Virus record (IMG/VR): IMGVR_UViG_3300009537_002640
Span: 1-64,000 of that record
Direction: 5' to 3' (one strand)
DNA: 64,000 nucleotides
The position numbers and the translations under genes are program-made. Below, in pieces: positions 12,395-41,801 of this stretch. Each line of letters begins with the position of its first letter. Position 1 is the stretch's first letter. The notes under the pieces were generated by a model. It was not told where the DNA came from. It made no database searches and worked only from the letters and a program-made list of their open reading frames with translations.

Positions 12395-12396
12395 AG

Positions 12397-25680: not shown

Positions 25681-27150
25681 CTATAAGATGTCAAATCCCG
25701 CTTCATCAAATACAAATGCTACCGGGTCTGCATCATCACCATAAGTTTTAAGTTCGACTGGTCCTCCCCATAGTTCATATATATATCCCATGGTTTTCTC
25801 AGTATACTTCTCATCTAAAGGGCCAAAGTCGTCTGAATGTTGGAGCATTAATATATCTCCATCTACCTGATTTACTGTCACAAGAGGTGCTCCATAATTA
25901 ATGGTGGGGCGAATTATATTTTCGATAATCTTATCTAACTCTCTATCTTTCAATTCAATAATACCGTACTCTTCGGGCAAATCATCTTCGTCCATACCTG
26001 GTTCTCGTTCATGTCTATATCCATAGTTGAACAAGCCCAGACTTGTAGCTAACTCAGGTGTTAGATAGTTACGTAAGAACGATGCGTCATCTTCTTCAGC
26101 CGCGACCTCTATTACCTTTTGTATGCCAGTGATATCTGATTCACCATCTTTGTACTTCTTATCCCACCTCTCTCGAATATCAGTAAACACTTTGAACCCT
26201 AAATAGTAAGGATTGATTCGGAAAGGGTGTCCTGGACTTACCACTGAAGCGTGGCACTTACAAAACTCTAAATGTTCCTCCTCACTTGTTTCATGATACT
26301 TAAACATTAGCTCCGCATGCCAAAAGGAAGCAAAGCCTTCATTCATAATCTTGGTCATAACAATGGGATAGAAGTAGTACGACTCTTCTCGTATAATACC
26401 AAGTATATCCTTCTCCCATTCTTCTAACGGAGCATAATTAGTAAGAAACCAAAGCAGGTCTCGCTCAGGATGCGGAGGTAGCTTTTCACCTTCCACCCGA
26501 TATCTTATGCTTCTCTTATTATTGTTGATATTTAGTAGATCGTCGAACTCATCCCTATGTACTTTTTCTTCTATTATGTGCTTATCAGGATAGCGTTTTC
26601 TATATACGCCTTTATGCCAATCTATGTGATTATCTAAAGCAAAACCTATATCCATTAGGTGTTCTACTTTCTCTAACCCATATTGCTCTACATAATCATC
26701 AACTCTAGCTGCTCTTTCTGCAGCTCTATAAATCATATTTCGGTCTGAACCCTTAAACATATGATTGTGCTTAAAAAAATGCACATGCCCAAAGACATGT
26801 GCTGCGACCATGATGTTAATTACATCCAAATTTGTATTCAAAAGGAAAGCATAAGATGGGTCATTATTGAATACAATCTCATACACTTTTGATAGCCCCA
26901 TCTCACCATATATCTTTTGGTGGTCATAGGAGCGACCGTATGACCAGTGGCGCGCTCTAACTGGTAAGCCATATGAACAAGCCTCCAGCATGATGTCTCT
27001 ATTAACATATTCAAAGATAGTAGGGAAGAAATCTAATCCCTCTTTACGGGCTAGCTCTTCCATGTCTTTGATTGCTTTAAATACGTATTCTTGGCCCATA
27101 ATAAATATCCTTACACAAGCATTGTGCCTGCCATAGTTACTGTTTTCCAA
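25681..27150 (-). CDS. spoVR: SpoVR/YcgB family protein
   Basis: YGLPVRARHWSYG, YEIVFNNDPSYAFLL, AHVFGHVHFFKHN, TKIMNEGFASFWH, INPYYLG, FLRNYLT, LWGGPVELKT. Confidence 0.95.
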   Translation of the reverse strand: MENSNYGRHNACVRIFIMGQEYVFKAIKDMEELARKEGLDFFPTIFEYVNRDIMLEACSYGLPVRARHWSYGRSYDHQKIYGEMGLSKVYEIVFNNDPSYAFLLNTNLDVINIMVAAHVFGHVHFFKHNHMFKGSDRNMIYRAAERAARVDDYVEQYGLEKVEHLMDIGFALDNHIDWHKGVYRKRYPDKHIIEEKVHRDEFDDLLNINNNKRSIRYRVEGEKLPPHPERDLLWFLTNYAPLEEWEKDILGIIREESYYFYPIVMTKIMNEGFASFWHAELMFKYHETSEEEHLEFCKCHASVVSPGHPFRINPYYLGFKVFTDIRERWDKKYKDGESDITGIQKVIEVAAEEDDASFLRNYLTPELATSLGLFNYGYRHEREPGMDEDDLPEEYGIIELKDRELDKIIENIIRPTINYGAPLVTVNQVDGDILMLQHSDDFGPLDEKYTEKTMGYIYELWGGPVELKTYGDDADPVAFVFDEAGFDIL

Positions 27151-27545
27151 TCGTGATTTAACAACTCTCGTATAGCTGGTTTATCCACTCTCTGATACTC
27201 ATCAATTAGCAGGTGTATATCTCTTGTTCTAATCCCATCAAAGCATCTATCATACATAGAGGTTGCTGCTGTCACACGCATTCTATCCACCCCTGTTCTA
27301 TTAACAAAAGCTTTGACATATTTTTGGGTGGGAACTACCACCATAAAATACTCATTGCGTGAATCAAATATATAAGCAAGTTTGCCCAGCATATTAGTTT
27401 TGCCTGACTGCCGAGGTACAGTACTAACAAAAGCACCATATTCTTGCCACCAAATATCTATCGCGGATGTATACTTTTTGATAGAGGGTAGATAAATATC
27501 ATGATGATATTTCCATCTATACAGCTCTAAATCCATATAGTTCAT
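27111..27545 (-). CDS. Minimal P-loop NTPase (terminase/SF-helicase-like ATPase fold, 144 aa)
   Basis: Walker A VPRQSGKT, FMVVVPT strand, Walker B LLIDE; overlaps both neighbours. Confidence 0.7.
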   Translation of the reverse strand: MNYMDLELYRWKYHHDIYLPSIKKYTSAIDIWWQEYGAFVSTVPRQSGKTNMLGKLAYIFDSRNEYFMVVVPTQKYVKAFVNRTGVDRMRVTAATSMYDRCFDGIRTRDIHLLIDEYQRVDKPAIRELLNHDWKTVTMAGTMLV

Positions 27546-28717
27546 TCTTCCTTACCCTCGATTCCTAAGAACTGTTTCAAACAAGTATAAATGTCTTCTT
27601 TCTGCTCAATAGCTGCTGTAAGAAAACGCGGATGGTCTATACTCTTCTCAAACTCTTGATGAAGGGTAGACCATCTAAACCCACTGCCCCCATAGTTGTA
27701 AAAGCTATCAGTATTAATTTCTCCGTACCCCACCGCACTGCACAGTTCTAGCAACTCTTTTACCAGCTCAACGCACTTCTCATTATCAGATGGCCAGTTG
27801 TCCCCATCACTAAAAGAGAATACGTAATTGTTCCATTGAGCAGGGGGATGATTAGCCTCTATATGCTCTAAGGCCAGCTTGAATGCTGAGCTACACATCG
27901 TTCCACCAGAGTTAGATATCTTGAAGAAGTTCTCTTCAGGAACCACAGCAGCTCTGGTATCGTGAGCAATAAAGATTAACTCTACGAAGTTATACTTGGT
28001 CTTACAAAAGTGCGCCAACCAAAAGAAGAATGATTTAGCTATGTACTTCTTATCGTCATCCATACTGCCTGAGCGGTCCATTAGGAAATACACAGCGGCA
28101 TTGGAGTGATATTCTTTCTCTAAGTCCCATATCTTGTAACGTAAATCTTCTGGGCGGATGTTCTTAATTTCCGCCTTGCCCTTTTTAGCATTACGCTTCA
28201 TGTTCTCGAAGATGGTGCGCTTCTTGTCTACGTTAGACAATGGGCCAACTTCTGCCAAGTCAGTGAACTTAATGTTCTCTGTCTCAATCTCTACTGCACT
28301 ATCCTTAGCCTCAAGCCAGGGCAAGTCAAGGTCTTCTAGCATCATCTGTATGATTTCAGCTAGCTCTACTTCTTCCTCGTAGATTTCATCACCAGCCTGA
28401 TCATCTGCCTGATTGCCAGTGCCTTTACCCTTACGCCCTGTGCCATCATGAGCAATCATATCTCCGGGCTTAGCATCGCCTTCGCCTTGGCCTACACCCT
28501 CTTTATTCTTATCATCAGCGTGCTTAAACCTATACGTATCTAGAAACTTGATAGGAATCTTAACCTTCCTCTTTCCATCAGAGGAGATAATGCTGGCATC
28601 ACTAACCAAATCCTTCAGATTCTCTCGTATGGCCTTTTTAACACGCTGGGAGTGTCGTGCAGAGTCACGCTTGCCGCGTTTACGCATTCCCCAGATATCT
28701 AGTAAGCTATCGCTCAT
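27542..28717 (-). CDS. yhbH: YhbH/YeaH (DUF444) vWA-domain protein
   Basis: RHSQRVKKAIRENL, KVKIPI, GQGEG, LEDLDLPWL, MIDAS motif LMDRSGSM, SGGTMCSSA, FSDGDNW. Confidence 0.93.
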   Translation of the reverse strand: MSDSLLDIWGMRKRGKRDSARHSQRVKKAIRENLKDLVSDASIISSDGKRKVKIPIKFLDTYRFKHADDKNKEGVGQGEGDAKPGDMIAHDGTGRKGKGTGNQADDQAGDEIYEEEVELAEIIQMMLEDLDLPWLEAKDSAVEIETENIKFTDLAEVGPLSNVDKKRTIFENMKRNAKKGKAEIKNIRPEDLRYKIWDLEKEYHSNAAVYFLMDRSGSMDDDKKYIAKSFFFWLAHFCKTKYNFVELIFIAHDTRAAVVPEENFFKISNSGGTMCSSAFKLALEHIEANHPPAQWNNYVFSFSDGDNWPSDNEKCVELVKELLELCSAVGYGEINTDSFYNYGGSGFRWSTLHQEFEKSIDHPRFLTAAIEQKEDIYTCLKQFLGIEGKEE

Positions 28718-28724
28718 TTTAACC

Positions 28725-30719
28725 TCATGTGGTTTTAGACATTAGTGAGTTCACATATCGTAGCAATTGATTTGCTGAATCGACATTATACCCATACTTA
28801 TCAACCAACGTCTCGATAACCTGATTGATTTTCTTCAACGCCTCAGGGTCAGGATTACGTGAGCTAACGGTCAGACGAATGATATCTGCACGCTCGTCGA
28901 ACAGCTGCTTCTCAAGAGCCTCTTTCAATTTAGCATGACTCTGATAGTCAAACTCAACACCATCGCTTCTACGCTGAAGTACCTTACGAAGTGCTTCCTG
29001 CCTAAAACTATCCTTAGTAGCATCACTGATTCCTACCTTCTCTTCGATACTTCTCATTAGCCCATGGTCTGGTTCGTGGTGCTCACCAAACTCATCAACC
29101 AAATCTGTATCATCTAGATAGGCAGCTACGTTATCTACGTAGTTGTTCAACAGGTTGTTGATTTCCTTATCGAAGTTGACAAAGAATGCCTTCTGAACTT
29201 CGGTCTTAGCCATCTTGGTATATTCCTCAATGACAGTCATGATAATCTCATCAAAGCGTTCGAGGTCTTCCTTACCAAACTTGGCACTGCTCTCAAAGTT
29301 TTCCTTAATAGACCTCAGTACATCAATAGGAGTTATGCAACGCAAGTTGTGCTTACTGAAGCAATCTGCAATACAGTTAAAGATGTAACGTGGACTCACT
29401 CCATCCATACCCTCTCTATCTGCCTCTTCCTTAATGTCCTTCAAGTCTTCCTTAGTGAAGCCATCGACATCGCTACTGTTATATAGATGTAGTTTCTTTA
29501 GTAGAGTAAGATTCTGGTCCTTACCTGGCTCTAGACGACTCATAACTGCAAACATAGATGCTACCTTAAGAGTAAGTGGAGCAACATGTACATCACCGAA
29601 ATCGGCTTCAGCAACCAGCTTCTTGTAAATCTTCTCTTCTTCATCTAAGATTAAGTTATACGGAGCCTTCACAACAATGATACGGTCATGCAACGCTTCC
29701 ATCTTAGTGTCCGCCAAGAAACGAGTATATTCGGTTTCATTGGTGTGCGCAAGAATAAACTCATCAGCGTAAATAAGTGGGAAACGCTCAGTTTTAATGG
29801 TCTTTTCTTGTGCTAAGGTTAGTAGTACATGAAGAAACTTAGGGTCAACCTTTAGCATTTCTATCATTTCCATAATGCCACGGTTTGCTACGTTTAATTC
29901 GCCATCAAACTTGTAAGCACGGGGGTCTGATTCAACACCAAACTCGCCTAACTTACTAAAGTCTACAGAGCCTACAAGCTCGGTAATAGATTGGTTCTTA
30001 GTATCGCCTGGTAAGAATGTACCTATGCCGATACGATTGGTTTCTGAAATGAACAGGCGTTTCACTGGCAACTTTAGCCATTCGCCATTATATTTATGGT
30101 CTAGTAGGTGTTGCACTGGCGGGGATAGTCTTGCTAACGGGTCAATCTTAATGCCGTACTTTTCTCGAAACATTGGTCGTAGGTCGACCGGAACAGCATT
30201 AAGTGGATTCTCGTGCATTGGAGAATCTGTAAGGGCATAAATCGCACCTTCTTTAGTGCGAGACCACGCTTCAAGCCCGTGCTTTAGAAGTGTAGCCATT
30301 TGACTCTTACCAGAGCTTGTTGGCCCGTACAGTAGCAAAATACGACGGCCAACTTGAGAGCCACTGGCTGCAGCCTTTAGGTACTTCACTACCTTATGAA
30401 TCATGTTATCAACGCCAAACAACTCCTGGTTAAAAAACTTGTACCTGGGAATCGTTTGTGTTTTGTCTTCCTCATCGTAGTCCACACCTGCACTGAGTAT
30501 CATATCTAATACTCGGGAATGGGCTAACTGAGCAAGTTTAGGGTTTTCTTGAACCAAAGGAATGAATTCTTCCAGGGTACCTTCCCACTCATGAGTATCC
30601 TGTTTCCTGCTAAACTCGGCGATATCTTTAAAGATATCTTGTTTAGTTCCTTGTCCCTCTAATGTCTTTTCATCGGACATAGTATTACCTCCACTGTTAA
30701 GAACCTTGCTTCTTGACAT
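28725..30719 (-). CDS. prkA: PrkA/YeaG family AAA+ protein
   Basis: Walker A LYGPTSSGKS, SPMHENPL, ESDPRAYKFDGELNVANRG, AHTNETEY, EALHDR, EGMDGVSPRY. There is a second in-frame ATG at 30680, also with GGAGG. Confidence 0.95.
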   Translation of the reverse strand: MSRSKVLNSGGNTMSDEKTLEGQGTKQDIFKDIAEFSRKQDTHEWEGTLEEFIPLVQENPKLAQLAHSRVLDMILSAGVDYDEEDKTQTIPRYKFFNQELFGVDNMIHKVVKYLKAAASGSQVGRRILLLYGPTSSGKSQMATLLKHGLEAWSRTKEGAIYALTDSPMHENPLNAVPVDLRPMFREKYGIKIDPLARLSPPVQHLLDHKYNGEWLKLPVKRLFISETNRIGIGTFLPGDTKNQSITELVGSVDFSKLGEFGVESDPRAYKFDGELNVANRGIMEMIEMLKVDPKFLHVLLTLAQEKTIKTERFPLIYADEFILAHTNETEYTRFLADTKMEALHDRIIVVKAPYNLILDEEEKIYKKLVAEADFGDVHVAPLTLKVASMFAVMSRLEPGKDQNLTLLKKLHLYNSSDVDGFTKEDLKDIKEEADREGMDGVSPRYIFNCIADCFSKHNLRCITPIDVLRSIKENFESSAKFGKEDLERFDEIIMTVIEEYTKMAKTEVQKAFFVNFDKEINNLLNNYVDNVAAYLDDTDLVDEFGEHHEPDHGLMRSIEEKVGISDATKDSFRQEALRKVLQRRSDGVEFDYQSHAKLKEALEKQLFDERADIIRLTVSSRNPDPEALKKINQVIETLVDKYGYNVDSANQLLRYVNSLMSKTT

Positions 30720-32084: not shown

Positions 32085-32286
32085 CTTTATTACTCTTGGA
32101 TGCTACTACCATCACATCTCTACCACTAATCGATATAATATCCTGAAAGCTCCTAGATGATAAGACATGGCGCTTAAACTTAGGGTCAGTAATCTCCATC
32201 ACCAAGCGTACCACACCAGTTTCTTCATCTTGCTCTACTCGGATTACTTTTCCGACCGGCTTAGATTCCAAGGTCATCGTCATCAT
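32077..32286 (-). CDS. Hypothetical protein
   Basis: Small ORF directly downstream of dnaB. Confidence 0.6.
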   Translation of the reverse strand: MMTMTLESKPVGKVIRVEQDEETGVVRLVMEITDPKFKRHVLSSRSFQDIISISGRDVMVVASKSNKDE

Positions 32287-33655
32287 CCCCTGCGAATGTC
32301 TCGTCTACCATATCAATAAGCTTCATTCGCGGGAAGTCCTTACTCAATACAAATGAACCCTTTTCGCCATCTCGCATCTTAATAATGTAGATGGGCATGT
32401 CGGCTCTTGCGTACTCATCATCACGACAGCCTATTTGAATAATGATATTTGCATTGTTGGTAACCATGTCCGAACGTGCAAGGCGGTCAGTAGAGTAGTG
32501 TTGTTTATTCGGGTCTTTTGGTCTGTTAACCTGAGAGCCTGTGATTACTGGTATGTTGTATACACGAGCAAACTCGTGCAAGTCTGCGGCAATCTTACCG
32601 AGTGCCAACCAGTCTGAATCCCCTGGCTCGTTAGGTGCCATAATACCAATGTAGTCTATGATAACCAAGTCTGGTTTAAACTTGGTCTCGCACAGTTCAA
32701 CAAACTTAAGCTCAATCTCTCTGGTAGTTGCGCCCTTTGGCATATCTACAATGTGAAAATTGTAAGGATATTCCATCTGGAACTTTAGTACTTCAAAATA
32801 CTTATCCTTCTCTTCCTCGGACAACTTACCATCCCTTATATAGTTGTAGATAAGACCACCCATACAGGAGTCAATACGTCGCTCCATAGAAGACTTAGGC
32901 ATCTCTAGAGAGAAGTACAGAACATTGTGTCCTTTGTTTAAAGCTGCCGCTACACCTTGGAATGGGTCATTTCTATTGAGATATGCATTGACACCTATGT
33001 TGTGCATAACAACAGATTTACCTGTTCCTGTCGCGCCTGCTACAATCATAAGCTCACCAGGATGGAGCCCGTTTGTAATCCTATCAAACTCAGTGAACCC
33101 TGTTAAGATGCCTCTGGCCATATCGGGGTTAGCTTCTAGTTCTCGATAGTAATCCTCTCTTGTCTGGGCACTTTCGCTGAGTGAACCCTCTTCATAAGTT
33201 TCTCTCTTATAAATAGAGTCTATGTCTACTACAGCTTCTCGCACAAGGCGATTCACCTTATCCAATGCATCCTCTTGTCCGCTCTTGATTATGTCCCTGG
33301 AATCTTTGATGAGCGACTTGTGCAGAATCTTGTTATATCTGACACGAAACTTGTCCAAAATCCAAGTGAACTCCCGGTTATCTATCTCCGTCGCTGCTAT
33401 CTGATCGTACAAACCCACCACATCATCGTCCAAGTCAGTATCTAGTTTAGATGCGTACTCAGCTATGATGTCTCGTGTTGGAATGGATTTGTACTTGGGA
33501 TTCTCAAAATGCTCCATAATGGTTTTATAGAGCCATCGGTACTGAGGCGCGAAATACTCTTCGGTAATGGAACTTGTGCTCAACTCCATTGCGATTGTTT
33601 TGTCTTTTAAAGCATAAGCAATGATTTTTTGATCAAGCGTTATTTCCTGAGTCAT
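32261..33655 (-). CDS. dnaB: Replicative DnaB-like helicase
   Basis: TGFTEFDRITNGLHPGELMIVAGATGTGKS, YFSLEM, VIIDYIGIM, GSQVNR, LARS, KMRDG. Confidence 0.92.
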   Translation of the reverse strand: MTQEITLDQKIIAYALKDKTIAMELSTSSITEEYFAPQYRWLYKTIMEHFENPKYKSIPTRDIIAEYASKLDTDLDDDVVGLYDQIAATEIDNREFTWILDKFRVRYNKILHKSLIKDSRDIIKSGQEDALDKVNRLVREAVVDIDSIYKRETYEEGSLSESAQTREDYYRELEANPDMARGILTGFTEFDRITNGLHPGELMIVAGATGTGKSVVMHNIGVNAYLNRNDPFQGVAAALNKGHNVLYFSLEMPKSSMERRIDSCMGGLIYNYIRDGKLSEEEKDKYFEVLKFQMEYPYNFHIVDMPKGATTREIELKFVELCETKFKPDLVIIDYIGIMAPNEPGDSDWLALGKIAADLHEFARVYNIPVITGSQVNRPKDPNKQHYSTDRLARSDMVTNNANIIIQIGCRDDEYARADMPIYIIKMRDGEKGSFVLSKDFPRMKLIDMVDETFAGDDDDDLGI

Positions 33656-34310
33656 CAGCTAACCTCTTTCTAAAGTCTTTCCCTACTACAGGATAGACCT
33701 TCAAATATTGATTGTTTAACGAATCTATACTCTGCACTCCTGGCCCATAAAACACCCTTAGAATGTCTTGTGTTTCATTTGTACAAAGTATAGTTGGTAA
33801 TTGATTGTGTGCTCTGTGCCTAAAGATAAGTTCATATTTACCACTAAAGAACTCTCTCATGCTATCACTGGTAAAGAATCTAGAATCCAACTCATCTATC
33901 ACCAAGAAGTCTACGTTCTTAAGATGTGAACGAATGCTGCTGGTTTCTTTATCAGATAAATCACTAAGCATATCAGCTGCAGTTGTATAATAGGCAGAGA
34001 AGTCTTTCTTCAGAGCTTCTTTAAGAATACATATGGACGACATAGTTTTGCCTGTGCCTTGATTACCGGCTAAACAAATAGAGCGTCCTTCCATATAGTA
34101 GTTTTGAAGATTGGCAACATAATCGTCAACTATCTCTTTAAGCTTAGGAGACCCTTCGAACTTATCCATAGTCAAGAACCAATAACCTGCCGGTATGTTA
34201 GCATCCGACATCTTGTCTATCATTCTATGTATCTTGGTGGTCTTGATTCCTTGCCCATGTTCAGCGAGAACTCTTGCCTTTATTAATTCTTTCTTTCTTC
34301 CAATAGTCAT
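33633..34310 (-). CDS. DnaC/IstB-like AAA+ helicase loader
   Basis: GNQGTGKT, LVIDEL, R..NQLPTILCTN; adjacent to dnaB. Confidence 0.85.
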   Translation of the reverse strand: MTIGRKKELIKARVLAEHGQGIKTTKIHRMIDKMSDANIPAGYWFLTMDKFEGSPKLKEIVDDYVANLQNYYMEGRSICLAGNQGTGKTMSSICILKEALKKDFSAYYTTAADMLSDLSDKETSSIRSHLKNVDFLVIDELDSRFFTSDSMREFFSGKYELIFRHRAHNQLPTILCTNETQDILRVFYGPGVQSIDSLNNQYLKVYPVVGKDFRKRLADDSGNNA

Positions 34311-34461
34311 TTCTGGCTCTTTCTTTCTGTAAAAGTGAGAAGCACTTATCGTGGTAGTAATCCACTTTATTGAGTGCCTTGTTGCCTAATTTGCGCCTGT
34401 ATGTGTCTATCTTAGCATTTTTATACACTACTTTGCCACAATGTGCACATATCATGTCCAT
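34261..34461 (-). CDS. Small protein with CxxC/HxxC (putative Zn-binding)
   Basis: CAHC and HDKC motifs. Confidence 0.6.
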   Translation of the reverse strand: MDMICAHCGKVVYKNAKIDTYRRKLGNKALNKVDYYHDKCFSLLQKERARNDYWKKERINKGKSSR

Positions 34462-35069
34462 TATTTATCCACTCCCTGTTTTCTGACGGCACTGTTTAAC
34501 ATATCGACCATCTGTTGGCCTGACATAAACTGCTTACCTAAATTACCGCCCATGCTAAATGTGTTTTGGCTTCCTGGATTAGACGGAGGAGTAATCTCCT
34601 CGCCTTCTTCCTCTTCGGTCACTGTAGTAATATACAACTTTCCTGGATGATACTCTACTTGTTTCTGTCTTCGTCCCGCCAAAATAGACTGTACATCTGG
34701 ATTGCCCAGCGCCACTCTCATAATATCATCACTAAAGACATCAGTCCTAAATGTTGATGGCGTAGGAATATCTATGATGTGGTCACCGTTGATGAATACA
34801 GTTAAGAAGCCCGGCTGCTGAACCTGTTGCTGTTGTGGTTGCGGTTGCTCCTGCTGTTCAGACTCATAAGTGGGTAGCACCCTTGACGTAGCAGAAAAAT
34901 TGTTGGTTACATAATATTTAACATTGTGCTTTGGAACTATGTATAGGTTTGTGCTGTTTTCCATTTGAATATATACATAGTATTCCTCTACATGTATAAG
35001 GATACCGCACAAAGTCTCCTCATCATTCTTTAGACTTACCCATACTTTATTACCTATCAAGTGTTCCAT
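34461..35069 (-). CDS. Protein with N-terminal Sm/LSm-like fold and Gln-rich linker
   Basis: LIGNKVWVSLKN...LCGILIHVEEYYVYIQ....YIVPKHNVKY resembles the Sm1/Sm2 pattern; followed by EQQEQPQPQQQQVQQ. Confidence 0.55.
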   Translation of the reverse strand: MEHLIGNKVWVSLKNDEETLCGILIHVEEYYVYIQMENSTNLYIVPKHNVKYYVTNNFSATSRVLPTYESEQQEQPQPQQQQVQQPGFLTVFINGDHIIDIPTPSTFRTDVFSDDIMRVALGNPDVQSILAGRRQKQVEYHPGKLYITTVTEEEEGEEITPPSNPGSQNTFSMGGNLGKQFMSGQQMVDMLNSAVRKQGVDK

Positions 35070-35070
35070 A

Positions 35071-35805
35071 TTAGCTCCTTATGTTAAGCATGTCATCTTT
35101 AATAAGATTCATTTTGGTTGCCTGCGCTATAACCCTAAACTCAGATGACTCGGGATTAATATCAGAGCTATAAGTCTTGACATACCCTAATAGCGCACCA
35201 AGGTCATTCATTGTATTAAGTTCGTAGTTAGTGAAAATCTCTGGTACATTATCGCCACACCAAGTAATGAAGTCTTTGGGCAACTTAGATGCCCTCGTAA
35301 AAGTCTTCTTCTTTTCTAAGTAGAGATTGTACTTACGCACAATGTTGGGTGTATTTAGATACGCAAAGCTGGTTATATCTGTATTTCTACCTATAGTTTT
35401 TGTGAAGAACCAATATATATATCTTCTTACCTCGTGTGCATCCCCTTGAAACGCACTTAAAAGAGACCAGGCATCTCGTACTTCTTTCGCACCATATGGA
35501 TTAGGATTTTGTGGAACAAACACATAATCTATATCGTAGTGCTTCTTGTACATACTACAAAAGAAGCCCACTATACAACTAACCTGGTGCTTCTTATTAT
35601 CCCAATTGTCCTTTATCTTGTACAGCTGGAGATAATCATTGTAGAACTTTTGCCATGTAAGCTCTTGCGCCCCGCATTTCTCACAGGTAAAAATAGGAGC
35701 ATTGTTTTCATGCGTAAGAAGATATTTACCAGGACACTTTACCCCTGCGATTACGTTTTTGCACTGGCTTACTCTTCTTCGCTTTCGCTTTTTGGTCTGT
35801 GTCAT
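35071..35805 (-). CDS. Hypothetical protein in the replication module, N-terminal Cys motifs
   Basis: 244 aa with a basic N-terminus and CEKC; lies between the SF2 helicase and the loader/helicase genes. Confidence 0.75.
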   Translation of the reverse strand: MTQTKKRKRRRVSQCKNVIAGVKCPGKYLLTHENNAPIFTCEKCGAQELTWQKFYNDYLQLYKIKDNWDNKKHQVSCIVGFFCSMYKKHYDIDYVFVPQNPNPYGAKEVRDAWSLLSAFQGDAHEVRRYIYWFFTKTIGRNTDITSFAYLNTPNIVRKYNLYLEKKKTFTRASKLPKDFITWCGDNVPEIFTNYELNTMNDLGALLGYVKTYSSDINPESSEFRVIAQATKMNLIKDDMLNIRS

Positions 35806-37288
35806 TAGTTAACCCTTTCTTGCTTGGTAGCTTGATTTTAAACCCTGCTTCGCTTCTATATATTTCTACTCTCTTTGCAGTATGGTTTAGCAGATATTTA
35901 GCATCGTCTATAAAATCTACTACTATTGCATCGGTCTTTCCTTTAGCAGGGCGAATAACCCTGCCAATACGCTGTAATGCCCTGGTTGAAGATTTGCCAG
36001 AGCCAGCTAATATTAGTGCATCCAGATTCGGAAGATTGATTCCCTGGTCATACACGACACTGGCAATGATTACATCTATCTTGCCACTAAGGAAATCCTG
36101 TCGAATCCTGTTGCGTTCTTCTGAGTCTACGTCGCCCCTTACAAAGTATATTACAAGATCTTCATCGAATTTGGAAAGTAAAATCTCCCCATGCTTGATA
36201 TTTTTTACTAAGATTAGGACTTTTCTGCCTTTTTCCAATAGCTTATTGGCGCACTTAACAATCTTGTCATTGCGCACATCATTCTCTACAACAAACGTCT
36301 TATATATAGAGGGGTATTTTTCAGGCAGAATCCCTTCATAGGCGGGAACATTAAGCAAATGAATAGTGGGCTGAACCAACCAACCATCTTTTATCAGCTC
36401 TGTGGCAGTAACCTCAACTATCTGTTTACCACAAACAGCCTCTAACAACAGATCAGCACCATCATCTCTAAATGGTGTGCCGCTAAACCCGTATTTGAAA
36501 TAGGCAGATTCGCTGGCGTTATTTATGGTTTGCATAGTTTGTGTTGCTAAGAATTGACATTCATCAAAGATAATCATCTCGGAAGCTTTAATCGCCTTTG
36601 CTATCTTTTCCTTGTTTTTGTCGTCGAACTTTTCTTTCTTAACAACATCTTCATCATCAAACGATTTATATTCTTCGCCCAGGGCACTTGCCGCTGTCCA
36701 TACGCTACATACATTTATCTTCTTAATGATAGCTTGTCCGTCACCGATGATGCCTACTTCTGTGCCAAGCATCTCCTCAAACGTTTCCTTCATTTGATAT
36801 AGCAGGTCTACGCCTATAACGTACACCATTGTCTTAACATTGGTTTCTGCTATGAGACGAGTAATCATTACAGACTTGCCACTACCTGTGGCTGCCTTAA
36901 CTATGCCTCCCTTGTGTTGTAGGCATGCTTGGTGCACTCGGTCTTGGTATGGCCTGCTTTCAATCTTTTTGGTTTTGATTTTGCGCTTGAGCTTAACTTC
37001 CTTGCGCTGGTCATCGATGGTGAACTTTACATTGTAGTTTTGAAGAATGTTGGTTACTTTGTGTAAAAGGCCAGTGTGAAAGCGCAACTTACCGTCCAGT
37101 AGGTGATTCCTACCATCCCATTTTTCCCACTTCTTGTTTTTGCTATTCCACCAGCCCGTCTTAAAAGCTTTGGTAAATTGATAGCCCTGAACATAGTAGC
37201 TTAATGCTTTATCTAACTTGTATTTAACATCACTACTTTCCAGTCCGTCAATCTTGGAATAGACGTTGTTTACAATTATAGTAACCAT
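35726..37288 (-). CDS. Superfamily 2 helicase (UvsW/RAD25-like)
   Basis: SRPYQ, AATGSGKS, IFDECQ, FGFSGTPFR, GINLPNL, LQRIGRVIR. Confidence 0.92.
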   Translation of the reverse strand: MVTIIVNNVYSKIDGLESSDVKYKLDKALSYYVQGYQFTKAFKTGWWNSKNKKWEKWDGRNHLLDGKLRFHTGLLHKVTNILQNYNVKFTIDDQRKEVKLKRKIKTKKIESRPYQDRVHQACLQHKGGIVKAATGSGKSVMITRLIAETNVKTMVYVIGVDLLYQMKETFEEMLGTEVGIIGDGQAIIKKINVCSVWTAASALGEEYKSFDDEDVVKKEKFDDKNKEKIAKAIKASEMIIFDECQFLATQTMQTINNASESAYFKYGFSGTPFRDDGADLLLEAVCGKQIVEVTATELIKDGWLVQPTIHLLNVPAYEGILPEKYPSIYKTFVVENDVRNDKIVKCANKLLEKGRKVLILVKNIKHGEILLSKFDEDLVIYFVRGDVDSEERNRIRQDFLSGKIDVIIASVVYDQGINLPNLDALILAGSGKSSTRALQRIGRVIRPAKGKTDAIVVDFIDDAKYLLNHTAKRVEIYRSEAGFKIKLPSKKGLTNDTDQKAKAKKSKPVQKRNRRGKVSW

Positions 37289-37294
37289 TACTCA

Positions 37295-38728
37295 TTAGCG
37301 TCTACGCCTATCTACCACCCTCTTAGAGTTCTTTGTTAGCTTGCCCATCGCAGAGTTCTTTGCGGTAATCTTCTTGTGCAATGCATCTGCTGCGCTAACA
37401 GTCTGAGTCTTTCCAAGGTCGATGTTCATAGTCTCCGCACGAGTACTTTCTTTACCCTCTAGTGCCTTCATATGACGCTCAGCCTCAGCCTTAAGTTCTT
37501 TCACTCGTTCCTCTGGTAGTCCCAATCCACTGAAGAAAGTATAAATCTTCAAACTGTCTTCGTGGCCCGGAACTTCATAAACACCACGGAACACACGAGT
37601 TCCCTCGTTGCATATCTTGCTTACCATAGCAAATCCGTATTCTAGGTTTGCTGCTGGAACTTCCTCAAGCGCCTTCTTGCTACCAGTAACAATAACACCA
37701 GCCGAACGAGTTTGACCTAGATTGAAGTCAGCAGACAACAGCCCGCTTTCTAAACTGGTTAGCATAGCCTCAGCTACTGCCTCGTCCTCTAGGTAATCTT
37801 CAACTTCAATCATACCGTATAGAGCACAGTCACCAGTTCCCACAAAGACTCTCGAAAAGTCCATTGGGTCTAGAGAAGTGTGTTCGGATGGATTAGCTGA
37901 AAGCTTGTTGAACAAGTGAATAGGCTCAACAATAGCAGTGTTTGCTGTCTTCCAGAATTGTGCCATGGACATACCAGGATACATAAGCTCAATCTTAGCA
38001 TTATCCACAACGAACAGTGAGTTGATTACATCACTGCTTGCCATCTTAGCCAACTTAGCTAAAGTTTGAATGGAGTTGTGCTTAGATAAGCTATCCTCAC
38101 TGGACATGGGTAGCACATATAGCACAGACAATGGCTTGCCTAATTGTGACATAAGGCTCACCATAGTTTCGGCAGAACCTGAACCAGTACCACCACCACC
38201 AGAGACGCATAACAAGAGAATCTCAGTATCCTCTAGATGCTCCTCTAGGTGTTTTAGAATTTCATCAGAATATGTCTCTGCTGCAGCTTTACCAGTATCT
38301 AGGTCCTTACCTGCACCGCCGAGAGCATAGTCCAAAAATAACTTTTGAGCCTCTGGAATATGAACATGCTTCAAATCCTGAGTAGCTGTGTTGATAGCAA
38401 CAGTGCTGTAGCCTCGACCATAAAACTCCTCGGCCAACTTAGACCCACACTGTCCAACACCAACAACTCCAAGATTAACGCTCCTATCCTGTTGCTCTAC
38501 TAACATAACGGTCATATCCTCTTCCTCCGTTGGTTGCTCTTGCTCTTTACGCATCTCTTGTTTTTCTTTTAGAACGTCATCAAGCGAAGCCATATTTGGC
38601 CTTCTAGCCTTTAGCTCTGCTTCAAGACGAGCATTTTCTTCTACAATCTCGCCATCTGTTTTGATTCTTTTTGGCTGCCCATCCGAATCAACTACGACAA
38701 CTCGATTTCCTTTTTCCTCTTCCGACAT
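37295..38728 (-). CDS. Tubulin/FtsZ-superfamily GTPase (PhuZ/TubZ/CetZ-like)
   Basis: GVVGVGQCGSKL, AINTATQDL, GAGKD, tubulin signature GGGTGSG, VVDN. Has a ~80 aa acidic N-terminal extension and a basic C-terminal tail. Confidence 0.9.
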   Translation of the reverse strand: MSEEEKGNRVVVVDSDGQPKRIKTDGEIVEENARLEAELKARRPNMASLDDVLKEKQEMRKEQEQPTEEEDMTVMLVEQQDRSVNLGVVGVGQCGSKLAEEFYGRGYSTVAINTATQDLKHVHIPEAQKLFLDYALGGAGKDLDTGKAAAETYSDEILKHLEEHLEDTEILLLCVSGGGGTGSGSAETMVSLMSQLGKPLSVLYVLPMSSEDSLSKHNSIQTLAKLAKMASSDVINSLFVVDNAKIELMYPGMSMAQFWKTANTAIVEPIHLFNKLSANPSEHTSLDPMDFSRVFVGTGDCALYGMIEVEDYLEDEAVAEAMLTSLESGLLSADFNLGQTRSAGVIVTGSKKALEEVPAANLEYGFAMVSKICNEGTRVFRGVYEVPGHEDSLKIYTFFSGLGLPEERVKELKAEAERHMKALEGKESTRAETMNIDLGKTQTVSAADALHKKITAKNSAMGKLTKNSKRVVDRRRR

Positions 38729-38729
38729 T

Positions 38730-39473
38730 TTAATCTCCTGTCACTAAGTCATAGAACTTATCATACTTAGTTGTGTCTAATGATACATCGTTTGGTAAGT
38801 CTACGTCCTTAATATCTGCTCTTGACATAGGCTTAACGTTAACGTTTCGTCTTCTTGCTAGTTCATAAATCGATTTTCTATCTGTACCCACATTGATAAT
38901 ACCAGTTAGCTCTGTGTCTGGAAAACAATGCAGCAAAAAGCTTATCTTGTCAGCTATAACATCAACATAGTCTGCTGAAGAGTACAAATCATCAAATGCC
39001 TTTGGGTATGGCCATGGTGTATTTGGCTTAAAGCTGGTTCTTATTATCAAGTCGTTAGCATCATACCATGCTTCTCCCATAAGCTTTGTGCAGGCATAGT
39101 AGTTTATGGGCCGCGTTCTATCTGTCTCTTTATATATTCCCTTGTCTCCAGGATAAACATAATCAGTGGAGATATATATCACAGGAAGCCCATATGTTCT
39201 GGCCCAACGCTTTACATTCATAGCGCCCTCTACATTTATCCTTACCGCCTGGAGCCTTCCCTCTTCAGTTTCTGCCCCAGGTACATTTGTATAGGCGGCA
39301 CAATGCACTATACCCCTGATTCGATGATAATTGCTTACCAAACTCTCAGGCGCATGTCTCAATAATACATCAGCATCATCGCTGCTGGGAGCTAAATAAC
39401 TGATGCCGTGTTCTGGAGCAATCTTTTGTAATTCGGTTCCTAGCACTCCGGAACCACCAGTCATAAAGTACAT
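38730..39473 (-). CDS. rmlD: dTDP-4-dehydrorhamnose reductase-like SDR
   Basis: TGGSGVLG, VHCAAYTNV, YISTDYVY, PINYYACTKLMGE. Confidence 0.88.
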   Translation of the reverse strand: MYFMTGGSGVLGTELQKIAPEHGISYLAPSSDDADVLLRHAPESLVSNYHRIRGIVHCAAYTNVPGAETEEGRLQAVRINVEGAMNVKRWARTYGLPVIYISTDYVYPGDKGIYKETDRTRPINYYACTKLMGEAWYDANDLIIRTSFKPNTPWPYPKAFDDLYSSADYVDVIADKISFLLHCFPDTELTGIINVGTDRKSIYELARRRNVNVKPMSRADIKDVDLPNDVSLDTTKYDKFYDLVTGD

Positions 39474-40613: not shown

Positions 40614-40825
40614 GTAACATACTGTGGCTTTTTCACAGGCGGCAATGACATTTTTAGAGTAGCTGGAGCAACATTGCTATTTAGCACCTTACTACGAAAC
40701 TCATCGTATTCTTTATAGAAACCTACAAGCTCTGAAACCTGTACTCTAATTCTATCTGGCTTCAGTAGAGCTTTGTATATCCACTTAAGTTCTCTTTTTA
40801 CTGGTATTCTTTTACTTGTCATCAA
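40577..40825 (-). CDS. Hypothetical protein
   Basis: ORF whose stop overlaps the rmlB start (ATGA). Confidence 0.6.
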   Translation of the reverse strand: MMTSKRIPVKRELKWIYKALLKPDRIRVQVSELVGFYKEYDEFRSKVLNSNVAPATLKMSLPPVKKPQYVTWIEKFLCEEEE

Positions 40826-41801
40826 AAACTATAGACCTAAAAGTATCGATTTCTTGAGCAGACACTTTTGCTTCCTTAGCACCATGCATATTACACTCTG
40901 CATAACGCTGAATGGAACCACCAGCATCTCCCCAGTATCCATTAACCATCTTATACGCCAGCTTGCCTTGCTTAGCGTAATAATCATTAACACTACTGAT
41001 TTCTAACTCGCCTCTTTCACTTGGGCTTGTTGTGTCGATAGTATTAAAAACATCATAGTCGAACATGTAAAGACCCACAACAGCTAAGTCACTCGCAGGA
41101 TTCTCTGGCTTCTCTACAATCTCCACTACCTTTTCATTCTCCACTTGAGCTACGCCATACGCCCTTGGGTTGTCTACATGCTTCAGCCACACACAAGCTT
41201 TGGTGTTTTCGTCTAGCTTAACCTGGTTGTCTATAGCACCAATATCGAATATATTGTCGCCCAAAATACACACTATCTCATCACCAGGTCTAGCAAAATC
41301 CTTAGCAAGATATAATGCTTCGGATACACCGCCCGCCCCTTCTTGAATCTTGTATGAAAAATCCATACCAAACTCTTTACCACTACCAAGCATTTTCATA
41401 GTAGCATTTGTGCCTTCACGGTCAGTAACCACTAAGGCTCGTTTAATACCAAAGTGCTGAAGGGTCTTTACTGGATAGAATATCATCGGAACTAGACCAA
41501 CAGGCAGGGTGTGTTTGTTCTGATACATAGTTAGCGGATACAGGCGTGTACCCTTTCCACCACAAAGTATAACACCAACCCTATCGTCTCTTCCAAAACT
41601 CTGCACCTTGGTTGCTATCTTAAAGCAATTACGACATCTTGTAACTAGGTTGGACAGGTGCCATGTTAATCTTCCCGCTCGTGGAACTAAAGGCTCTACT
41701 ATAAGGTCGTTTACCTCGTCTCCTGTAGTACCACAATGTCTGCATCGATGAGCATCTCTTTCTAAACATAATGCTTTCGCGTCATTTATACTATAACTCA
41801 T
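40812..41801 (-). CDS. rmlA: Glucose-1-phosphate thymidylyltransferase-like nucleotidyltransferase fused to an N-terminal degenerate HNH/Zn domain
   Basis: ILCGGKGTRLYPLT...NKH, LGDNIF, PRAYGVA, VEKP, AVVGLY, PSERGELEI. N-terminus has CRHCG...NLVTRCRNC. Confidence 0.88.
   Translation of the reverse strand: MSYSINDAKALCLERDAHRCRHCGTTGDEVNDLIVEPLVPRAGRLTWHLSNLVTRCRNCFKIATKVQSFGRDDRVGVILCGGKGTRLYPLTMYQNKHTLPVGLVPMIFYPVKTLQHFGIKRALVVTDREGTNATMKMLGSGKEFGMDFSYKIQEGAGGVSEALYLAKDFARPGDEIVCILGDNIFDIGAIDNQVKLDENTKACVWLKHVDNPRAYGVAQVENEKVVEIVEKPENPASDLAVVGLYMFDYDVFNTIDTTSPSERGELEISSVNDYYAKQGKLAYKMVNGYWGDAGGSIQRYAECNMHGAKEAKVSAQEIDTFRSIVFDDK

What the first reader, a model, noticed from the sequence alone, without database searches (positions are those of the whole stretch)
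37295..38728. Divergent phage tubulin/FtsZ-family protein with unusual N- and C-terminal extensions
The GGGTGSG signature and other GTP-binding loops are intact. At 477 aa it carries an ~80 aa acidic coiled-coil-like N-terminus and an extended C-terminus ending in a basic tail (KRVVDRRRR), which is longer than typical PhuZ. It sits directly upstream of the replication genes. Established: PhuZ and TubZ position phage DNA or nuclei. Inference: a spindle or segregation system, possibly a distinct tubulin clade, whose tails bind DNA, capsids or an adaptor.
Basis: partly seen in the sequence, partly recalled or inferred. Interest (0 to 1): 0.72.

Follow-up and report, generated by a model that had tools for sequence, protein, structure and literature searches.

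The report
TubZ-like tubulin of a megaphage
This gene encodes an intact tubulin/FtsZ-type GTPase from a large, uncharacterised, virus-only clade of huge tailed phages; it resembles plasmid TubZ rather than the phage-nucleus tubulin PhuZ, and its genomes lack every known partner of either system, so what its filaments move is still open.

Summary
Window 37295-38728 (-) is a 477-aa tubulin/FtsZ-family protein with intact GTP loops, an ~80-aa acidic N-terminal extension and a long basic C-terminal tail ending VVDRRRR.

It is not a one-off. At least 506 IMG/VR viral contigs encode full-length relatives, including five CheckV-complete genomes of 442-481 kb, each with one copy. Almost no cellular genomes hold it.

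By sequence profile, Pfam C-domain type and predicted fold (pLDDT 89; Z about 40) it is closest to plasmid TubZ, then CetZ and FtsZ. PhuZ is far. In trees it lies in a 100/100 clade apart from PhuZ, plasmid TubZ, c-st TubZ and FtsZ.

The tail motif [VI][VI]-D-[RK]-R-[RK]-[RK] marks the subfamily (73/73 IMG/VR relatives; 0/54 more distant TubZ-like proteins).

The gene sits in a conserved module, followed by a UvsW helicase, a DnaC-like protein and DnaB.

Chimallin, TubR, TubY, ParB, integrase and iterons were not found; positive controls worked.

Best reading: a GTP-driven cytomotive filament whose tail staples the polymer and recruits cargo, probably replicating phage DNA. The function is inferred, not shown. 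I rate it a new variant of a known kind.

The parts
37295..38728 (-). Tubulin/FtsZ-superfamily gene (477 aa, P0001), a TubZ-like megaphage clade
   Evidence: ORF and translation; PF00091 63.3 bits; AF2 model pLDDT 89.2; Foldseek and VIA best hits are TubZ
38489..38728 (-). N-terminal extension, residues 1-80: acidic (net -9), predicted beta-hairpin (11-13, 19-22) plus helices 25-41 and 49-63, then a low-confidence linker. The motif N-R-V-V-V-x-D...K-x-K-T-D-x-E-I-V-x-E-N is found mainly in members at 50% identity or above
   Evidence: (75/119 close homologues, 7/73 IMG/VR relatives); no counterpart in solved structures, whose alignments start at about residue 69-84; no meaningful Atlas match
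37988..38470 (-). GTPase domain (PF00091, residues 87-247) with T1 loop GVGQCGS (38441-38461) and T4 signature GGGGTGSG (38177-38200)
37856..37876 (-). T7 (synergy) loop SLDPMDF, residues 285-291. D287 is invariant. D290 falls opposite residue 269 of TubZ-Bt, which I recall as its catalytic aspartate
   Evidence: invariant columns; hhalign to TubZ-Bt, LDPMDF against YDPSDL
37490..37891 (-). TubZ-like C-terminal (activation) domain, residues 280-413 (PF22453, 22.2 bits, just under the 26-bit cut-off here; on record for most relatives)
37427..37513 (-). Long C-terminal helix, residues 406-434, aligned with the TubZ C-terminal helix
   Evidence: H406-434; VIA aligns model 77-440 to TubZ-Bt 16-416
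37298..37426 (-). Conserved basic C-terminal tail, residues 435-477: two short helices (446-458, 460-469) holding the S-A-[FM]-G-K-L motif, then the terminal R-V-V-D-R-R-R-R (37298-37321)
   Evidence: (D[RK]R in the last 8 residues in 111/119, 73/73 and 0/54 of the three groups)
35726..37288 (-). UvsW-type SF2 DNA helicase, starting 6 nt after the tubulin stop; downstream of the tubulin in 73/82 related loci
32261..35805 (-). Rest of the conserved replication module: 244-aa basic, Cys-rich protein (35071-35805), 202-aa protein (34461-35069), DnaC-like AAA+ (33633-34310), DnaB helicase (32261-33655)
38730..39473 (-). RmlD-like reductase directly upstream. Its stop is 1 nt before the tubulin ATG and the tubulin's AGGAG lies inside its 3' end. 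An epimerase/reductase gene takes this position in most relatives

Best explanation
The gene encodes a TubZ-like cytomotive GTPase. It is specific to a lineage of huge tailed phages (complete relatives 442-481 kb) that form no chimallin nucleus and show no sign of a plasmid-prophage lifestyle.

Shown by computation:
- The GTP-binding loops and the T7 acidic pair are intact.
- The fold is TubZ-like, including the long C-terminal helix.
- A single copy is present per complete genome.
- The distribution is virus-restricted.
- The gene has a fixed position at the head of a UvsW / DnaC-like / DnaB module.
- The subfamily-defining C-terminal peptide ends in V-V-D-R-R-R-R.

Inferred mechanism:
- Subunits assemble head to tail on GTP, each T7 loop completing the active site of the next subunit, to give polar, dynamic filaments.
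- As in TubZ, the flexible basic tail contacts the neighbouring subunit and is also the docking site for cargo.
- Given the conserved linkage to replication genes and the absence of TubR, tubC and chimallin, the cargo is most likely the replicating phage genome or its replication factory. It would be bound either directly by the Arg-rich tail or through an adaptor not yet recognised.
- The filament would then position or spread very large replicating genomes inside the infected cell.
For: Family and active site: PF00091 E=4.7e-17. T1, T4 and T7 residues are invariant in 105 homologues. P0001 D290 falls opposite residue 269 of TubZ-Bt.

TubZ likeness: the family profile against PDB gives pXO1 TubZ (RepX) 5.4e-37 over the full length, against about 1e-25 for TubZ-Bt, FtsZ and CetZ. 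hhalign gives TubZ-Bt 99.3%, E=1.7e-20, 322 columns. The Pfam C-domain type is the one plasmid TubZ carries (PF22453). AF2 pLDDT is 89.2. The Foldseek top 17 hits are all TubZ (3.5e-26). VIA Z is 40.5 and 40.3 for TubZ, 36-38 for CetZ, 31-34 for FtsZ.

Distinct clade: 100/100 support for the query's clade. PhuZ, plasmid TubZ and c-st TubZ sit on separate long branches. A single clade of the 30 basic-tailed proteins is not rejected (p-AU 0.52).

Tail: conserved down to about 31% identity. D[RK]R is in the last 8 residues in 73/73 IMG/VR relatives and 0/54 distant TubZ-like proteins. TubZ C-tails are known to range up to long and basic, to contact the upper subunit and to bind TubR and TubY (PMC5322520).

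Context: UvsW helicase downstream in 73/82 loci; DnaC-like and DnaB in 62/82 each; the same order on a 481-kb contig.

Phage identity and single copy.

Absences, each with a working control: chimallin, TubR (two types), TubY, ParB, integrase; no iterons.
Against: - No experiment exists, and polymerisation itself is unproven. The dimer prediction gave no answer.
- Conserved gene order among related phages may reflect shared ancestry, not functional coupling to replication.
- The invariant V-V-D in front of the Arg run argues for a specific protein contact rather than plain DNA binding.
- Adaptors such as TubR are small and diverge fast, so they could be missed. Only two TubR types and one TubY family were searched.
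- The window's own record is a fragment (CheckV 25%). Absences therefore rest on relatives whose tubulins are 42-53% identical.
- In other subclades the slot next to the tubulin holds cell-wall hydrolases, which hints at other roles.
- The tree backbone is unresolved and lacks CetZ, archaeal FtsZ and true tubulins.
Confidence: 0.45

Rival explanations
1. TubZRC-type partition motor. The megaphage persists as a low-copy extrachromosomal element (pseudolysogeny or plasmid-prophage, like Clostridium phage c-st). The tubulin segregates it, through an unrecognised adaptor and centromere that the basic tail binds.
For: Closest known relatives by sequence and fold are plasmid TubZ proteins. Basic C-tails bind TubR-DNA in those systems (PMC5322520). 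IMG/VR flags several relatives as 'provirus'.
Against: No TubR of the c-st or Bt type, no TubY, no ParB and no tyrosine integrase in the record or in five complete relatives, while c-st and pBtoxis controls score strongly. No iteron arrays in the 206-kb record. No winged-helix gene among the conserved neighbours. The gene is embedded in a sugar/replication gene string, with 1-nt and 6-nt junctions and no regulatory region of its own.
Confidence: 0.15
2. Virion-assembly or trafficking track. Filaments move or organise very large procapsids or other virion parts in the cell, like the capsid-delivery function of PhuZ but without a nucleus.
For: PhuZ filaments traffic capsids (literature quoted). 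Complete relatives have genomes of 442-481 kb, which imply very large capsids (my inference). The invariant tail peptide suits a specific protein cargo.
Against: The gene never sits with structural genes; it is fixed next to replication genes. PhuZ is the most distant reference. Nothing links the tail to a capsid protein.
Confidence: 0.12
3. Host-takeover factor. The phage tubulin acts on the host envelope or division machinery, for example blocking division or redirecting wall growth to enlarge the cell, with the S-A-F-G-K-L plus basic tail mimicking the FtsZ C-terminal peptide that recruits FtsA, ZipA or SepF.
For: The architecture (globular core, linker, short conserved peptide, basic end) parallels FtsZ. 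Upstream neighbours are glycan and cell-envelope enzymes. In other subclades the adjacent slot holds a GH25 lysozyme or an amidase with a PG-binding domain.
Against: The likeness to the FtsZ peptide (IPAFLRK) is only loose. Foldseek identity to solved FtsZ chains is about 20%, which I judge too low for co-polymerisation. No FtsZ_C domain is hit. The tail is too hydrophilic for a membrane-targeting helix (mean hydrophobicity about -0.2 to -0.5). The host is unknown.
Confidence: 0.12
4. PhuZ-type spindle that centres and rotates a proteinaceous phage nucleus.
For: It is a tubulin in a huge phage. A weak PHROG PhuZ hit (9.4e-9). Al-Shayeb et al. 2020 labelled huge-phage tubulins 'PhuZ'.
Against: Chimallin (phrog_4795) is absent from the record, from five complete relatives and from four partial ones; phiKZ scores 1.8e-232. 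The PhuZ C-domain PF22334 is not hit. The tail is basic, not the acidic PhuZ type. hhalign covers only 186 columns, E=2.6e-8. BFVD PhuZ models score about 1e-13 at 14% identity. PhuZ forms its own 100/100 clade.
Confidence: 0.04

Closest known systems
Plasmid TubZ (B. thuringiensis pBtoxis TubZ; pXO1 RepX / B. cereus TubZ): type III partition motor
   Same: Best sequence-profile, profile-profile and structural match. Same Pfam C-domain type, PF22453. Same size (477 against 484 aa). Same long C-terminal helix followed by a long, flexible, basic tail. T7 acidic pair aligned, DPxD.
   Different: Only about 21-24% identity. Separate clade: plasmid TubZ sits on its own 100/100 branch. No TubR, no TubY, no tubC iterons, not on a plasmid. 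Has an ~80-aa N-terminal extension without counterpart, and its own invariant tail ending V-V-D-R-R-R-R rather than ...NPFKKR.
PhuZ (phiKZ gp039, 201phi2-1 gp059) of nucleus-forming Chimalliviridae
   Same: A tubulin-superfamily GTPase encoded by a jumbo or huge tailed phage. A conserved C-terminal tail is important in both.
   Different: Most distant of the references compared. PhuZ is 315-327 aa with C-domain PF22334 and an acidic tail ending in hydrophobic residues. PhuZ co-occurs with chimallin, which these phages lack.
Clostridium phage c-st TubZ (TubZRC plus TubY system of a plasmid-prophage)
   Same: Phage-encoded TubZ-type protein. hhalign 98.9%, E=2.7e-17. VIA Z=33.
   Different: c-st TubZ is 358 aa with C-domain PF22340 and an acidic tail. 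It sits between tubR and tubY, in a phage that also has ParB and integrase genes; none of these are found here.
CetZ and archaeal FtsZ
   Same: High structural similarity (CetZ2 Z=38.2; M. jannaschii FtsZ Z about 32). Profile E about 1e-25 to 1e-20.
   Different: No CetZ_C or FtsZ_C domain is hit. Virus-restricted distribution. These score lower than TubZ in every comparison. They were not included in the trees because no sequences were available to me.

Membership tests
Tubulin/FtsZ superfamily | GTPase domain matching PF00091 above the curated cut-off | tested here: met
   63.3 bits against a cut-off of 33, E=4.7e-17, residues 87-247; 65.2 bits in the genome search
Tubulin/FtsZ superfamily | Nucleotide-binding loops: T1 GxGxxG and T4 signature GGGTG[ST]G | tested here: met
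   GVGQCGS 90-96 and GGGGTGSG 177-184; G92, G95, G179, G180, G182 invariant in 105 sequences
Tubulin/FtsZ superfamily | T7 synergy-loop acidic residue that activates GTP hydrolysis in the neighbouring subunit | tested here: met
   SLDPMDF 285-291; D287 invariant; D290 opposite residue 269 of TubZ-Bt in hhalign. The catalytic role is from literature knowledge, not assayed
Tubulin/FtsZ superfamily | GTP-dependent head-to-tail polymerisation | not testable with these tools
   The dimer prediction gave 'no answer', which is not evidence either way. Needs biochemistry and EM
TubZ (type III plasmid/prophage partition) | TubZ-type fold: two-domain core plus long C-terminal helix, with a TubZ-like C-domain | tested here: met
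   VIA Z=40.3-40.5, model 77-440 aligned to TubZ-Bt 16-416. Foldseek top 17 hits are all TubZ. PF22453 scores 22.2 bits here, under the 26-bit cut-off, but is on record for most relatives listed
TubZ (type III plasmid/prophage partition) | Adjacent centromere-binding adaptor TubR (and modulator TubY) | tested here: not met
   No winged-helix gene among the conserved neighbours. phrog_17403, Bt TubR and phrog_20864 are absent from G000-G005, with positive controls at 1.7e-57, 2.9e-68 and 1e-158. Caveat: TubR proteins diverge fast
TubZ (type III plasmid/prophage partition) | Centromere of tandem iterons (tubC) next to the operon | tested here: not met
   TRF finds only trivial 2-4 copy repeats in the window and in the whole 206-kb record. 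Gene junctions are 1 and 6 nt
TubZ (type III plasmid/prophage partition) | Carried by a stably maintained low-copy replicon (plasmid or plasmid-prophage) | tested here: not met
   No ParB or tyrosine integrase in G000-G005; c-st control positive. Tailed-phage hallmarks are present. Lifestyle was not observed directly
TubZ (type III plasmid/prophage partition) | Falls within the clade of characterised TubZ proteins | tested here: inconclusive
   Plasmid TubZ is a separate 100/100 long branch. The backbone joining it to the megaphage clade is unresolved
PhuZ (Chimalliviridae spindle tubulin) | PhuZ-type C-terminal domain (PF22334) | tested here: not met
   phiKZ PhuZ hits PF22334 at 1.7e-37. P0001 does not hit it at E<=0.1
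PhuZ (Chimalliviridae spindle tubulin) | Acidic C-terminal tail that docks on the next subunit | tested here: not met
   PhuZ tails end in an acidic pair followed by hydrophobic residues. This tail has net charge +9 and ends VVDRRRR
PhuZ (Chimalliviridae spindle tubulin) | Co-occurrence with the nuclear-shell protein chimallin | tested here: not met
   phrog_4795 is absent from G000, from five CheckV-100% relatives and from four partial ones; phiKZ control 1.8e-232. The phiKZ chimallin protein search was also negative
PhuZ (Chimalliviridae spindle tubulin) | Falls within the PhuZ clade | tested here: not met
   PhuZ is its own 100/100 clade on a branch of length 4.5. A tree holding the 30 megaphage proteins together, without PhuZ, is not rejected (p-AU 0.52)
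FtsZ (cellular division protein) | FtsZ_C domain, cellular chromosomal location, membership of the FtsZ clade | tested here: not met
   No PF12327 hit. Virus-restricted. Two bacterial FtsZ sequences are separated from the family by a 100/100 branch
CetZ (archaeal cell-shape tubulin) | CetZ_C domain, archaeal genomes, membership of the CetZ clade | tested here: inconclusive
   No CetZ_C hit. Structural Z of 36-38 is below TubZ. The distribution is viral. No CetZ sequences could be put in the tree

The most novel reading that the evidence does not exclude
These chimallin-less megaphages run an adaptor-free, nucleus-independent DNA-positioning spindle. The invariant C-terminal V-V-D-R-R-R-R peptide of a TubZ-like filament engages the replicating phage genome or its replisome directly (for example the co-located UvsW, DnaB or DnaC-like proteins). 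This would be a third kind of phage tubulin system, mechanistically distinct from PhuZ-chimallin and from TubZ-TubR-tubC.
Probability: 0.2. Interest if true: 0.75.

Novelty: new variant of a known kind. Interest (0 to 1): 0.52.

Why it matters
Two phage tubulin systems have been worked out. One is PhuZ with the chimallin nucleus. The other is TubZ with TubR, tubC and TubY in a plasmid-prophage.

This gene represents a third group that looks much larger, with at least 506 IMG/VR contigs. It is confined to huge phages (complete relatives 442-481 kb), it has the partners of neither known system, and databases label it only 'FtsZ' or 'CetZ' automatically.

It offers a concrete handle on how the largest phages organise replication of half-megabase genomes inside a bacterial cell: a single-copy gene, a confident model and a sharply defined tail peptide to mutate. 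It may also inform how TubZ, PhuZ and other viral tubulins are related.

No isolate phage among 50,697 records carries it at tblastn E<=1e-3, so experiments will have to begin with recombinant protein.

Tried and rejected
- Self-association prediction (two copies of residues 76-477): 'no answer'. This is not evidence for or against polymerisation.
- Public sequencing runs holding the locus: none was listed, so no read-level or expression check was possible.
- tblastn and megablast against 50,697 deposited phages: no match.
- Amphipathic membrane-targeting helix in the tail: rejected. The region is hydrophilic (mean hydrophobicity about -0.2 to -0.5). The hydrophobic moment rises only in the highly charged last residues.
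- Sm-like small proteins as a conserved adaptor. Two small families next to the tubulin in other subclades (c18, c26) are related to each other (hhalign 94%, E=1e-7). They are not related to the window's 202-aa protein (probability 1.5-5%) and are absent from the window.
- Promoter and terminator scan: counts equal those of the shuffles, so it tells nothing.
- N-terminal extension in the ESM Atlas: no meaningful look-alike.
- First AU test: confounded. My tail regex left out family members with variant tails. It was replaced.
- Apparent nesting of PhuZ and c-st TubZ inside the family in the quick tree: flagged by the tool as a meeting of long branches, and not upheld.
- A superfamily tree including CetZ, archaeal FtsZ, BtubA/B and Asgard tubulins could not be built. 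No tool gave me those sequences.
Full report
**1. The observation**

Window 37295-38728 (minus strand) is an uninterrupted 477-codon ORF. It has a good ribosome-binding site (AGGAG about 7 nt before the ATG) inside the end of the upstream RmlD-like gene, whose stop is 1 nt before the start. The next gene starts 6 nt after the tubulin stop.

Pfam places residues 87-247 in PF00091 (Tubulin/FtsZ GTPase domain) at 63.3 bits against a cut-off of 33. Residues 280-413 match PF22453 (TubZ-like C-terminal domain) at 22.2 bits, just under the cut-off of 26.

The T1 loop (GVGQCGS, 90-96), the T4 signature (GGGGTGSG, 177-184) and the T7 loop (SLDPMDF, 285-291) are present. Their key residues are invariant in an alignment of 105 homologues.

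The first 80 residues are acidic (net -9), the core is very acidic (net -21), and the last 25 residues are basic (net +9), ending KRVVDRRRR.

**2. What genome this is**

The window is the first 64 kb of a 206,495-bp IMG/VR viral record, which CheckV rates 25% complete. About 98% of it is coding, with 174 of 186 ORFs on one strand.

It encodes a baseplate wedge protein (1.5e-35), a tail sheath (3.9e-14) and a head-maturation protease domain. So it is a tailed phage with a contractile tail.

Downstream of the tubulin lie a UvsW-type helicase, two proteins without family matches, a DnaC-like AAA+ protein and DnaB. Beyond them are PrkA-YeaH-SpoVR, a ribonucleotide reductase and PhoH. Upstream is a long nucleotide-sugar and glycan island.

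**3. The family**

The protein is not an orphan.
- A word-indexed search found 825 homologues. The best 120 are 50-87% identical and mostly full length, on contigs of up to 481 kb.
- An exhaustive HMMER search of 1.84 billion cluster representatives found 174 clusters at E<=1e-30.
- Five of these contigs are CheckV-complete genomes of 442-481 kb, one with direct terminal repeats. Each has exactly one copy.
- A scan of one genome for each of 185,579 prokaryote species found only two hits, both on MAG contigs.
- The nearest ESM Atlas clusters are 96-97% viral and carry only automatic 'FtsZ cell division GTPase' names.
- No deposited phage among 50,697 records matches at tblastn E<=1e-3.

**4. 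Which known tubulin it resembles**

Every comparison gives the same order.

| Comparison | Plasmid TubZ | c-st TubZ | CetZ | FtsZ | PhuZ |
|---|---|---|---|---|---|
| Family profile vs PDB, E-value | RepX 5.4e-37 (full length); TubZ-Bt 1.3e-25 | about 1e-20 | 1.6e-24 to 3e-20 | archaeal 2.6e-25 | not in best 60 |
| hhalign | 99.3%, 1.7e-20, 322 columns | 98.9%, 2.7e-17 | not run | E. coli 98.2%, 3.5e-14 | 95.2%, 2.6e-8, 186 columns, GTPase domain only |
| Pfam C-domain type | PF22453, the one this family hits | PF22340 | not scanned (CetZ_C not hit by P0001) | not scanned (FtsZ_C not hit by P0001) | PF22334 |
| VIA Z-score | 40.5 (B. cereus), 40.3 (Bt) | 33 | 36-38 | 31-34 | not among the 50 entries shown |

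The AlphaFold2 model is confident (mean pLDDT 89.2, pTM 0.78). The top 17 Foldseek hits in the PDB are all TubZ chains, down to E=3.5e-26 with 377-413 aligned columns. The VIA alignment covers model residues 77-440 against TubZ-Bt 16-416. In BFVD the top hit is a full-length family member from an uncultured phage (38% identity, 5.6e-55), while PhuZ models score about 1e-13 at 14% identity.

**5. Phylogeny**

I built trees with the family, more distant TubZ-like representatives, five PhuZ, two plasmid TubZ, c-st TubZ and two bacterial FtsZ sequences.
- The query lies in a 100/100 clade of nine megaphage proteins.
- PhuZ (100/100, stem length 4.5), plasmid TubZ (100/100, stem 2.99) and c-st TubZ (branch 4.07) are separate long branches.
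- FtsZ is outside with 100/100 support.
- The backbone is unresolved.
- An apparent attachment of PhuZ inside the family was flagged as a long-branch join. A tree holding all 30 basic-tailed megaphage proteins together, without PhuZ, is not rejected and is marginally better (p-AU 0.52).

'A distinct tubulin clade' is supported. Its exact sister group is unknown. CetZ, archaeal FtsZ and true tubulins could not be included.

**6. The extensions**

*C-terminal.* After the core comes a long helix (406-434) that aligns with the TubZ C-terminal helix. It is followed by two short helices (446-458, 460-469) and a terminal coil.

The sequence of this region is conserved down to about 31% identity. It holds an S-A-[FM]-G-K-L motif and a terminal [VI][VI]-D-[RK]-R-[RK]-[RK].

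| Group | D[RK]R in the last eight residues |
|---|---|
| Close homologues (50% identity or more) | 111 of 119 |
| IMG/VR relatives | 73 of 73 |
| More distant TubZ-like representatives | 0 of 54 |

The tail is thus a defining character of this subfamily.

Tails of the references differ. Plasmid TubZ ends in a short basic cluster (...NPFKKR...IQNRK). PhuZ ends in an acidic pair followed by hydrophobic residues. FtsZ ends in IPAFLRK.

Published work on TubZ states that its C-tail ranges from short and acidic to more than 60 residues and basic. It contacts the upper subunit in the filament and carries the binding site for TubR and TubY (PMC5322520). The 'unusual' C-terminal extension is therefore TubZ-like in kind but has its own motif. 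The invariant V-V-D before the arginines suggests a specific protein contact rather than plain electrostatics (my inference).

*N-terminal.* Residues 1-80 are predicted at moderate confidence as a beta-hairpin plus two helices. They have no counterpart in solved homologues. Their motif is conserved mainly among the closer relatives.

**7. Context**

Across 82 loci with tubulins down to about 40% identity, the tubulin is followed on the same strand by:
- the UvsW-type helicase (73 loci);
- a roughly 200-aa protein of unknown function (63 loci);
- the DnaC-like protein (62 loci);
- DnaB (62 loci).

It is preceded by epimerase/reductase and GT2 genes. The same order occurs on a 481-kb contig. Between the tubulin and the helicase some subclades have a variable slot holding a GH25 lysozyme, an amidase or small proteins. 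The window has nothing there.

**8. Partners of the known systems are missing**

| Component | Family or query | Result in G000 and the five complete relatives | Positive control |
|---|---|---|---|
| Chimallin | phrog_4795 | absent (also from four partial relatives) | phiKZ 1.8e-232 |
| TubR, c-st type | phrog_17403 | absent | c-st 1.7e-57 |
| TubR, Bt type | pBtoxis protein | absent | pBtoxis 2.9e-68 |
| TubY | phrog_20864 | absent | c-st 1e-158 |
| ParB | PF02195 | absent | c-st 7.8e-10 |
| Tyrosine integrase | PF00589 | absent | c-st 2.5e-25 |

No iteron-like tandem repeats occur in the window or the whole record. Two caveats apply. Small adaptors diverge quickly. The window's own record is incomplete, so the absences rest on relatives whose tubulins are 42-53% identical.

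**9. Mechanism**

Shown by sequence and structure analysis: an intact GTP pocket and T7 acidic pair, a TubZ fold, a conserved tail, a single virus-restricted copy, and a fixed position in the replication module.

Inferred:
- GTP-dependent head-to-tail assembly into polar, dynamic filaments;
- the tail acting both as an inter-subunit contact and as a cargo site, as in TubZ;
- the cargo most likely being replicating phage DNA or the replication factory, bound directly or through an unknown adaptor.

I put the family assignment at about 0.9 and the proposed role at about 0.4. The combined statement is given 0.45.

Rivals:
- partition of a carrier-state replicon with an unrecognised adaptor (0.15);
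- a track for virion parts (0.12);
- manipulation of host division or wall growth (0.12);
- a PhuZ-type nuclear spindle (0.04).

**10. Literature and novelty**

The huge-phage survey only notes 'tubulin homologues (PhuZ)' (PMC7162821). A jumbo-phage comparative study speaks of two distinct FtsZ/tubulin representatives in jumbo phages (PMC7824862). Phage G has a separate FtsZ/tubulin-like gene (PMC12484599). A 2026 review discusses tubulin only as PhuZ in the passages retrieved (PMC13282480). A study of FtsZ/tubulin evolution does not mention phages or viruses at all (PMC9871819). Two papers on large aquatic phages and marine megaphages do not mention tubulin.

In the papers I searched and read I found no description of this clade, its tail motif or its context. 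I rate it a new variant of a known kind: a TubZ-like viral tubulin without the known TubZ or PhuZ partners. Interest is moderate. Tubulins in huge phages are expected, but the size of this clade, its distinctness and its missing partners make a concrete, testable problem.

Noticed in passing
window 25681-30719 (-): A complete PrkA (28725-30719), DUF444/YeaH (27542-28717) and SpoVR (25681-27150) three-gene module, known from bacterial stress and sporulation regulons, is encoded by the phage. PrkA and DUF444 sit in the same place on a 481-kb relative (L002).
   Followed up: partly
window 1490-17939 (-): Two giant ORFs of 3634 aa and 1680 aa with ConA-like/LamG and Big_5 domains, probably fibres or adhesins. 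The wider record has further ORFs of 2180-3811 aa.
   Followed up: partly
window 38730-59208 (-): A long nucleotide-sugar and glycan island directly upstream of the tubulin: RmlD, RmlB, an RmlA-like transferase with a ~70-aa Cys-rich N-terminal extension (40812-41801), UDP-glucose dehydrogenase, an epimerase, a saccharopine-dehydrogenase-like enzyme, a GT1, and a teichoic-acid-type CDP-glycerol glycerophosphotransferase (58126-59208). The last may hint at a Gram-positive host.
   Followed up: partly
P0143, P0156 (and probably L062, L082): P0143 (891 aa) and P0156 (983 aa, with a LAGLIDADG homing-endonuclease domain) carry inteins inserted in the tubulin at or near the GGGTGSG nucleotide-binding signature. 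The 800-807-aa tubulin ORFs of L062 and L082 probably do too, but were not scanned. The RmlB homologue on L002 also holds an intein.
   Followed up: partly
P0222, P0259, P0125: More distant TubZ-like representatives are fused to other modules: a PilM/FtsA actin-like domain (P0222, 818 aa), HEAT repeats (P0259), or a GT1 glycosyltransferase in front of the tubulin (P0125; this could be a gene-calling fusion).
   Followed up: no
L026, L029, L052, L064 and others, between the tubulin and the UvsW helicase: In other subclades a variable slot next to the tubulin holds a GH25 lysozyme (25 loci), an amidase_2 with a PG-binding domain, DUF1653, a highly basic ~90-aa protein (c39), and two related small families (c18, c26; hhalign 94%). 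None of these is present in the window.
   Followed up: yes
G001, G004, G007-G009 (relatives of 158-481 kb): IMG/VR classes several relatives, including two CheckV-100% genomes, as 'provirus'. No tyrosine integrase or ParB was found in the two complete ones (G001, G004). The flag may be an artefact of host-like genes.
   Followed up: partly
window 35726-35805: The UvsW-like helicase ORF overlaps the next ORF (244 aa, basic N-terminus with Cys pairs) by 80 nt. A similar 71-nt overlap is seen on L002, so the downstream gene may use a later start, or the overlap may be conserved.
   Followed up: no
window 18131-19429 and 21264-23681 (-): A PhoH fused to an N-terminal PIN domain, and a class I/II-type ribonucleotide reductase large subunit with a C-terminal TSCPD domain.
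   Followed up: no
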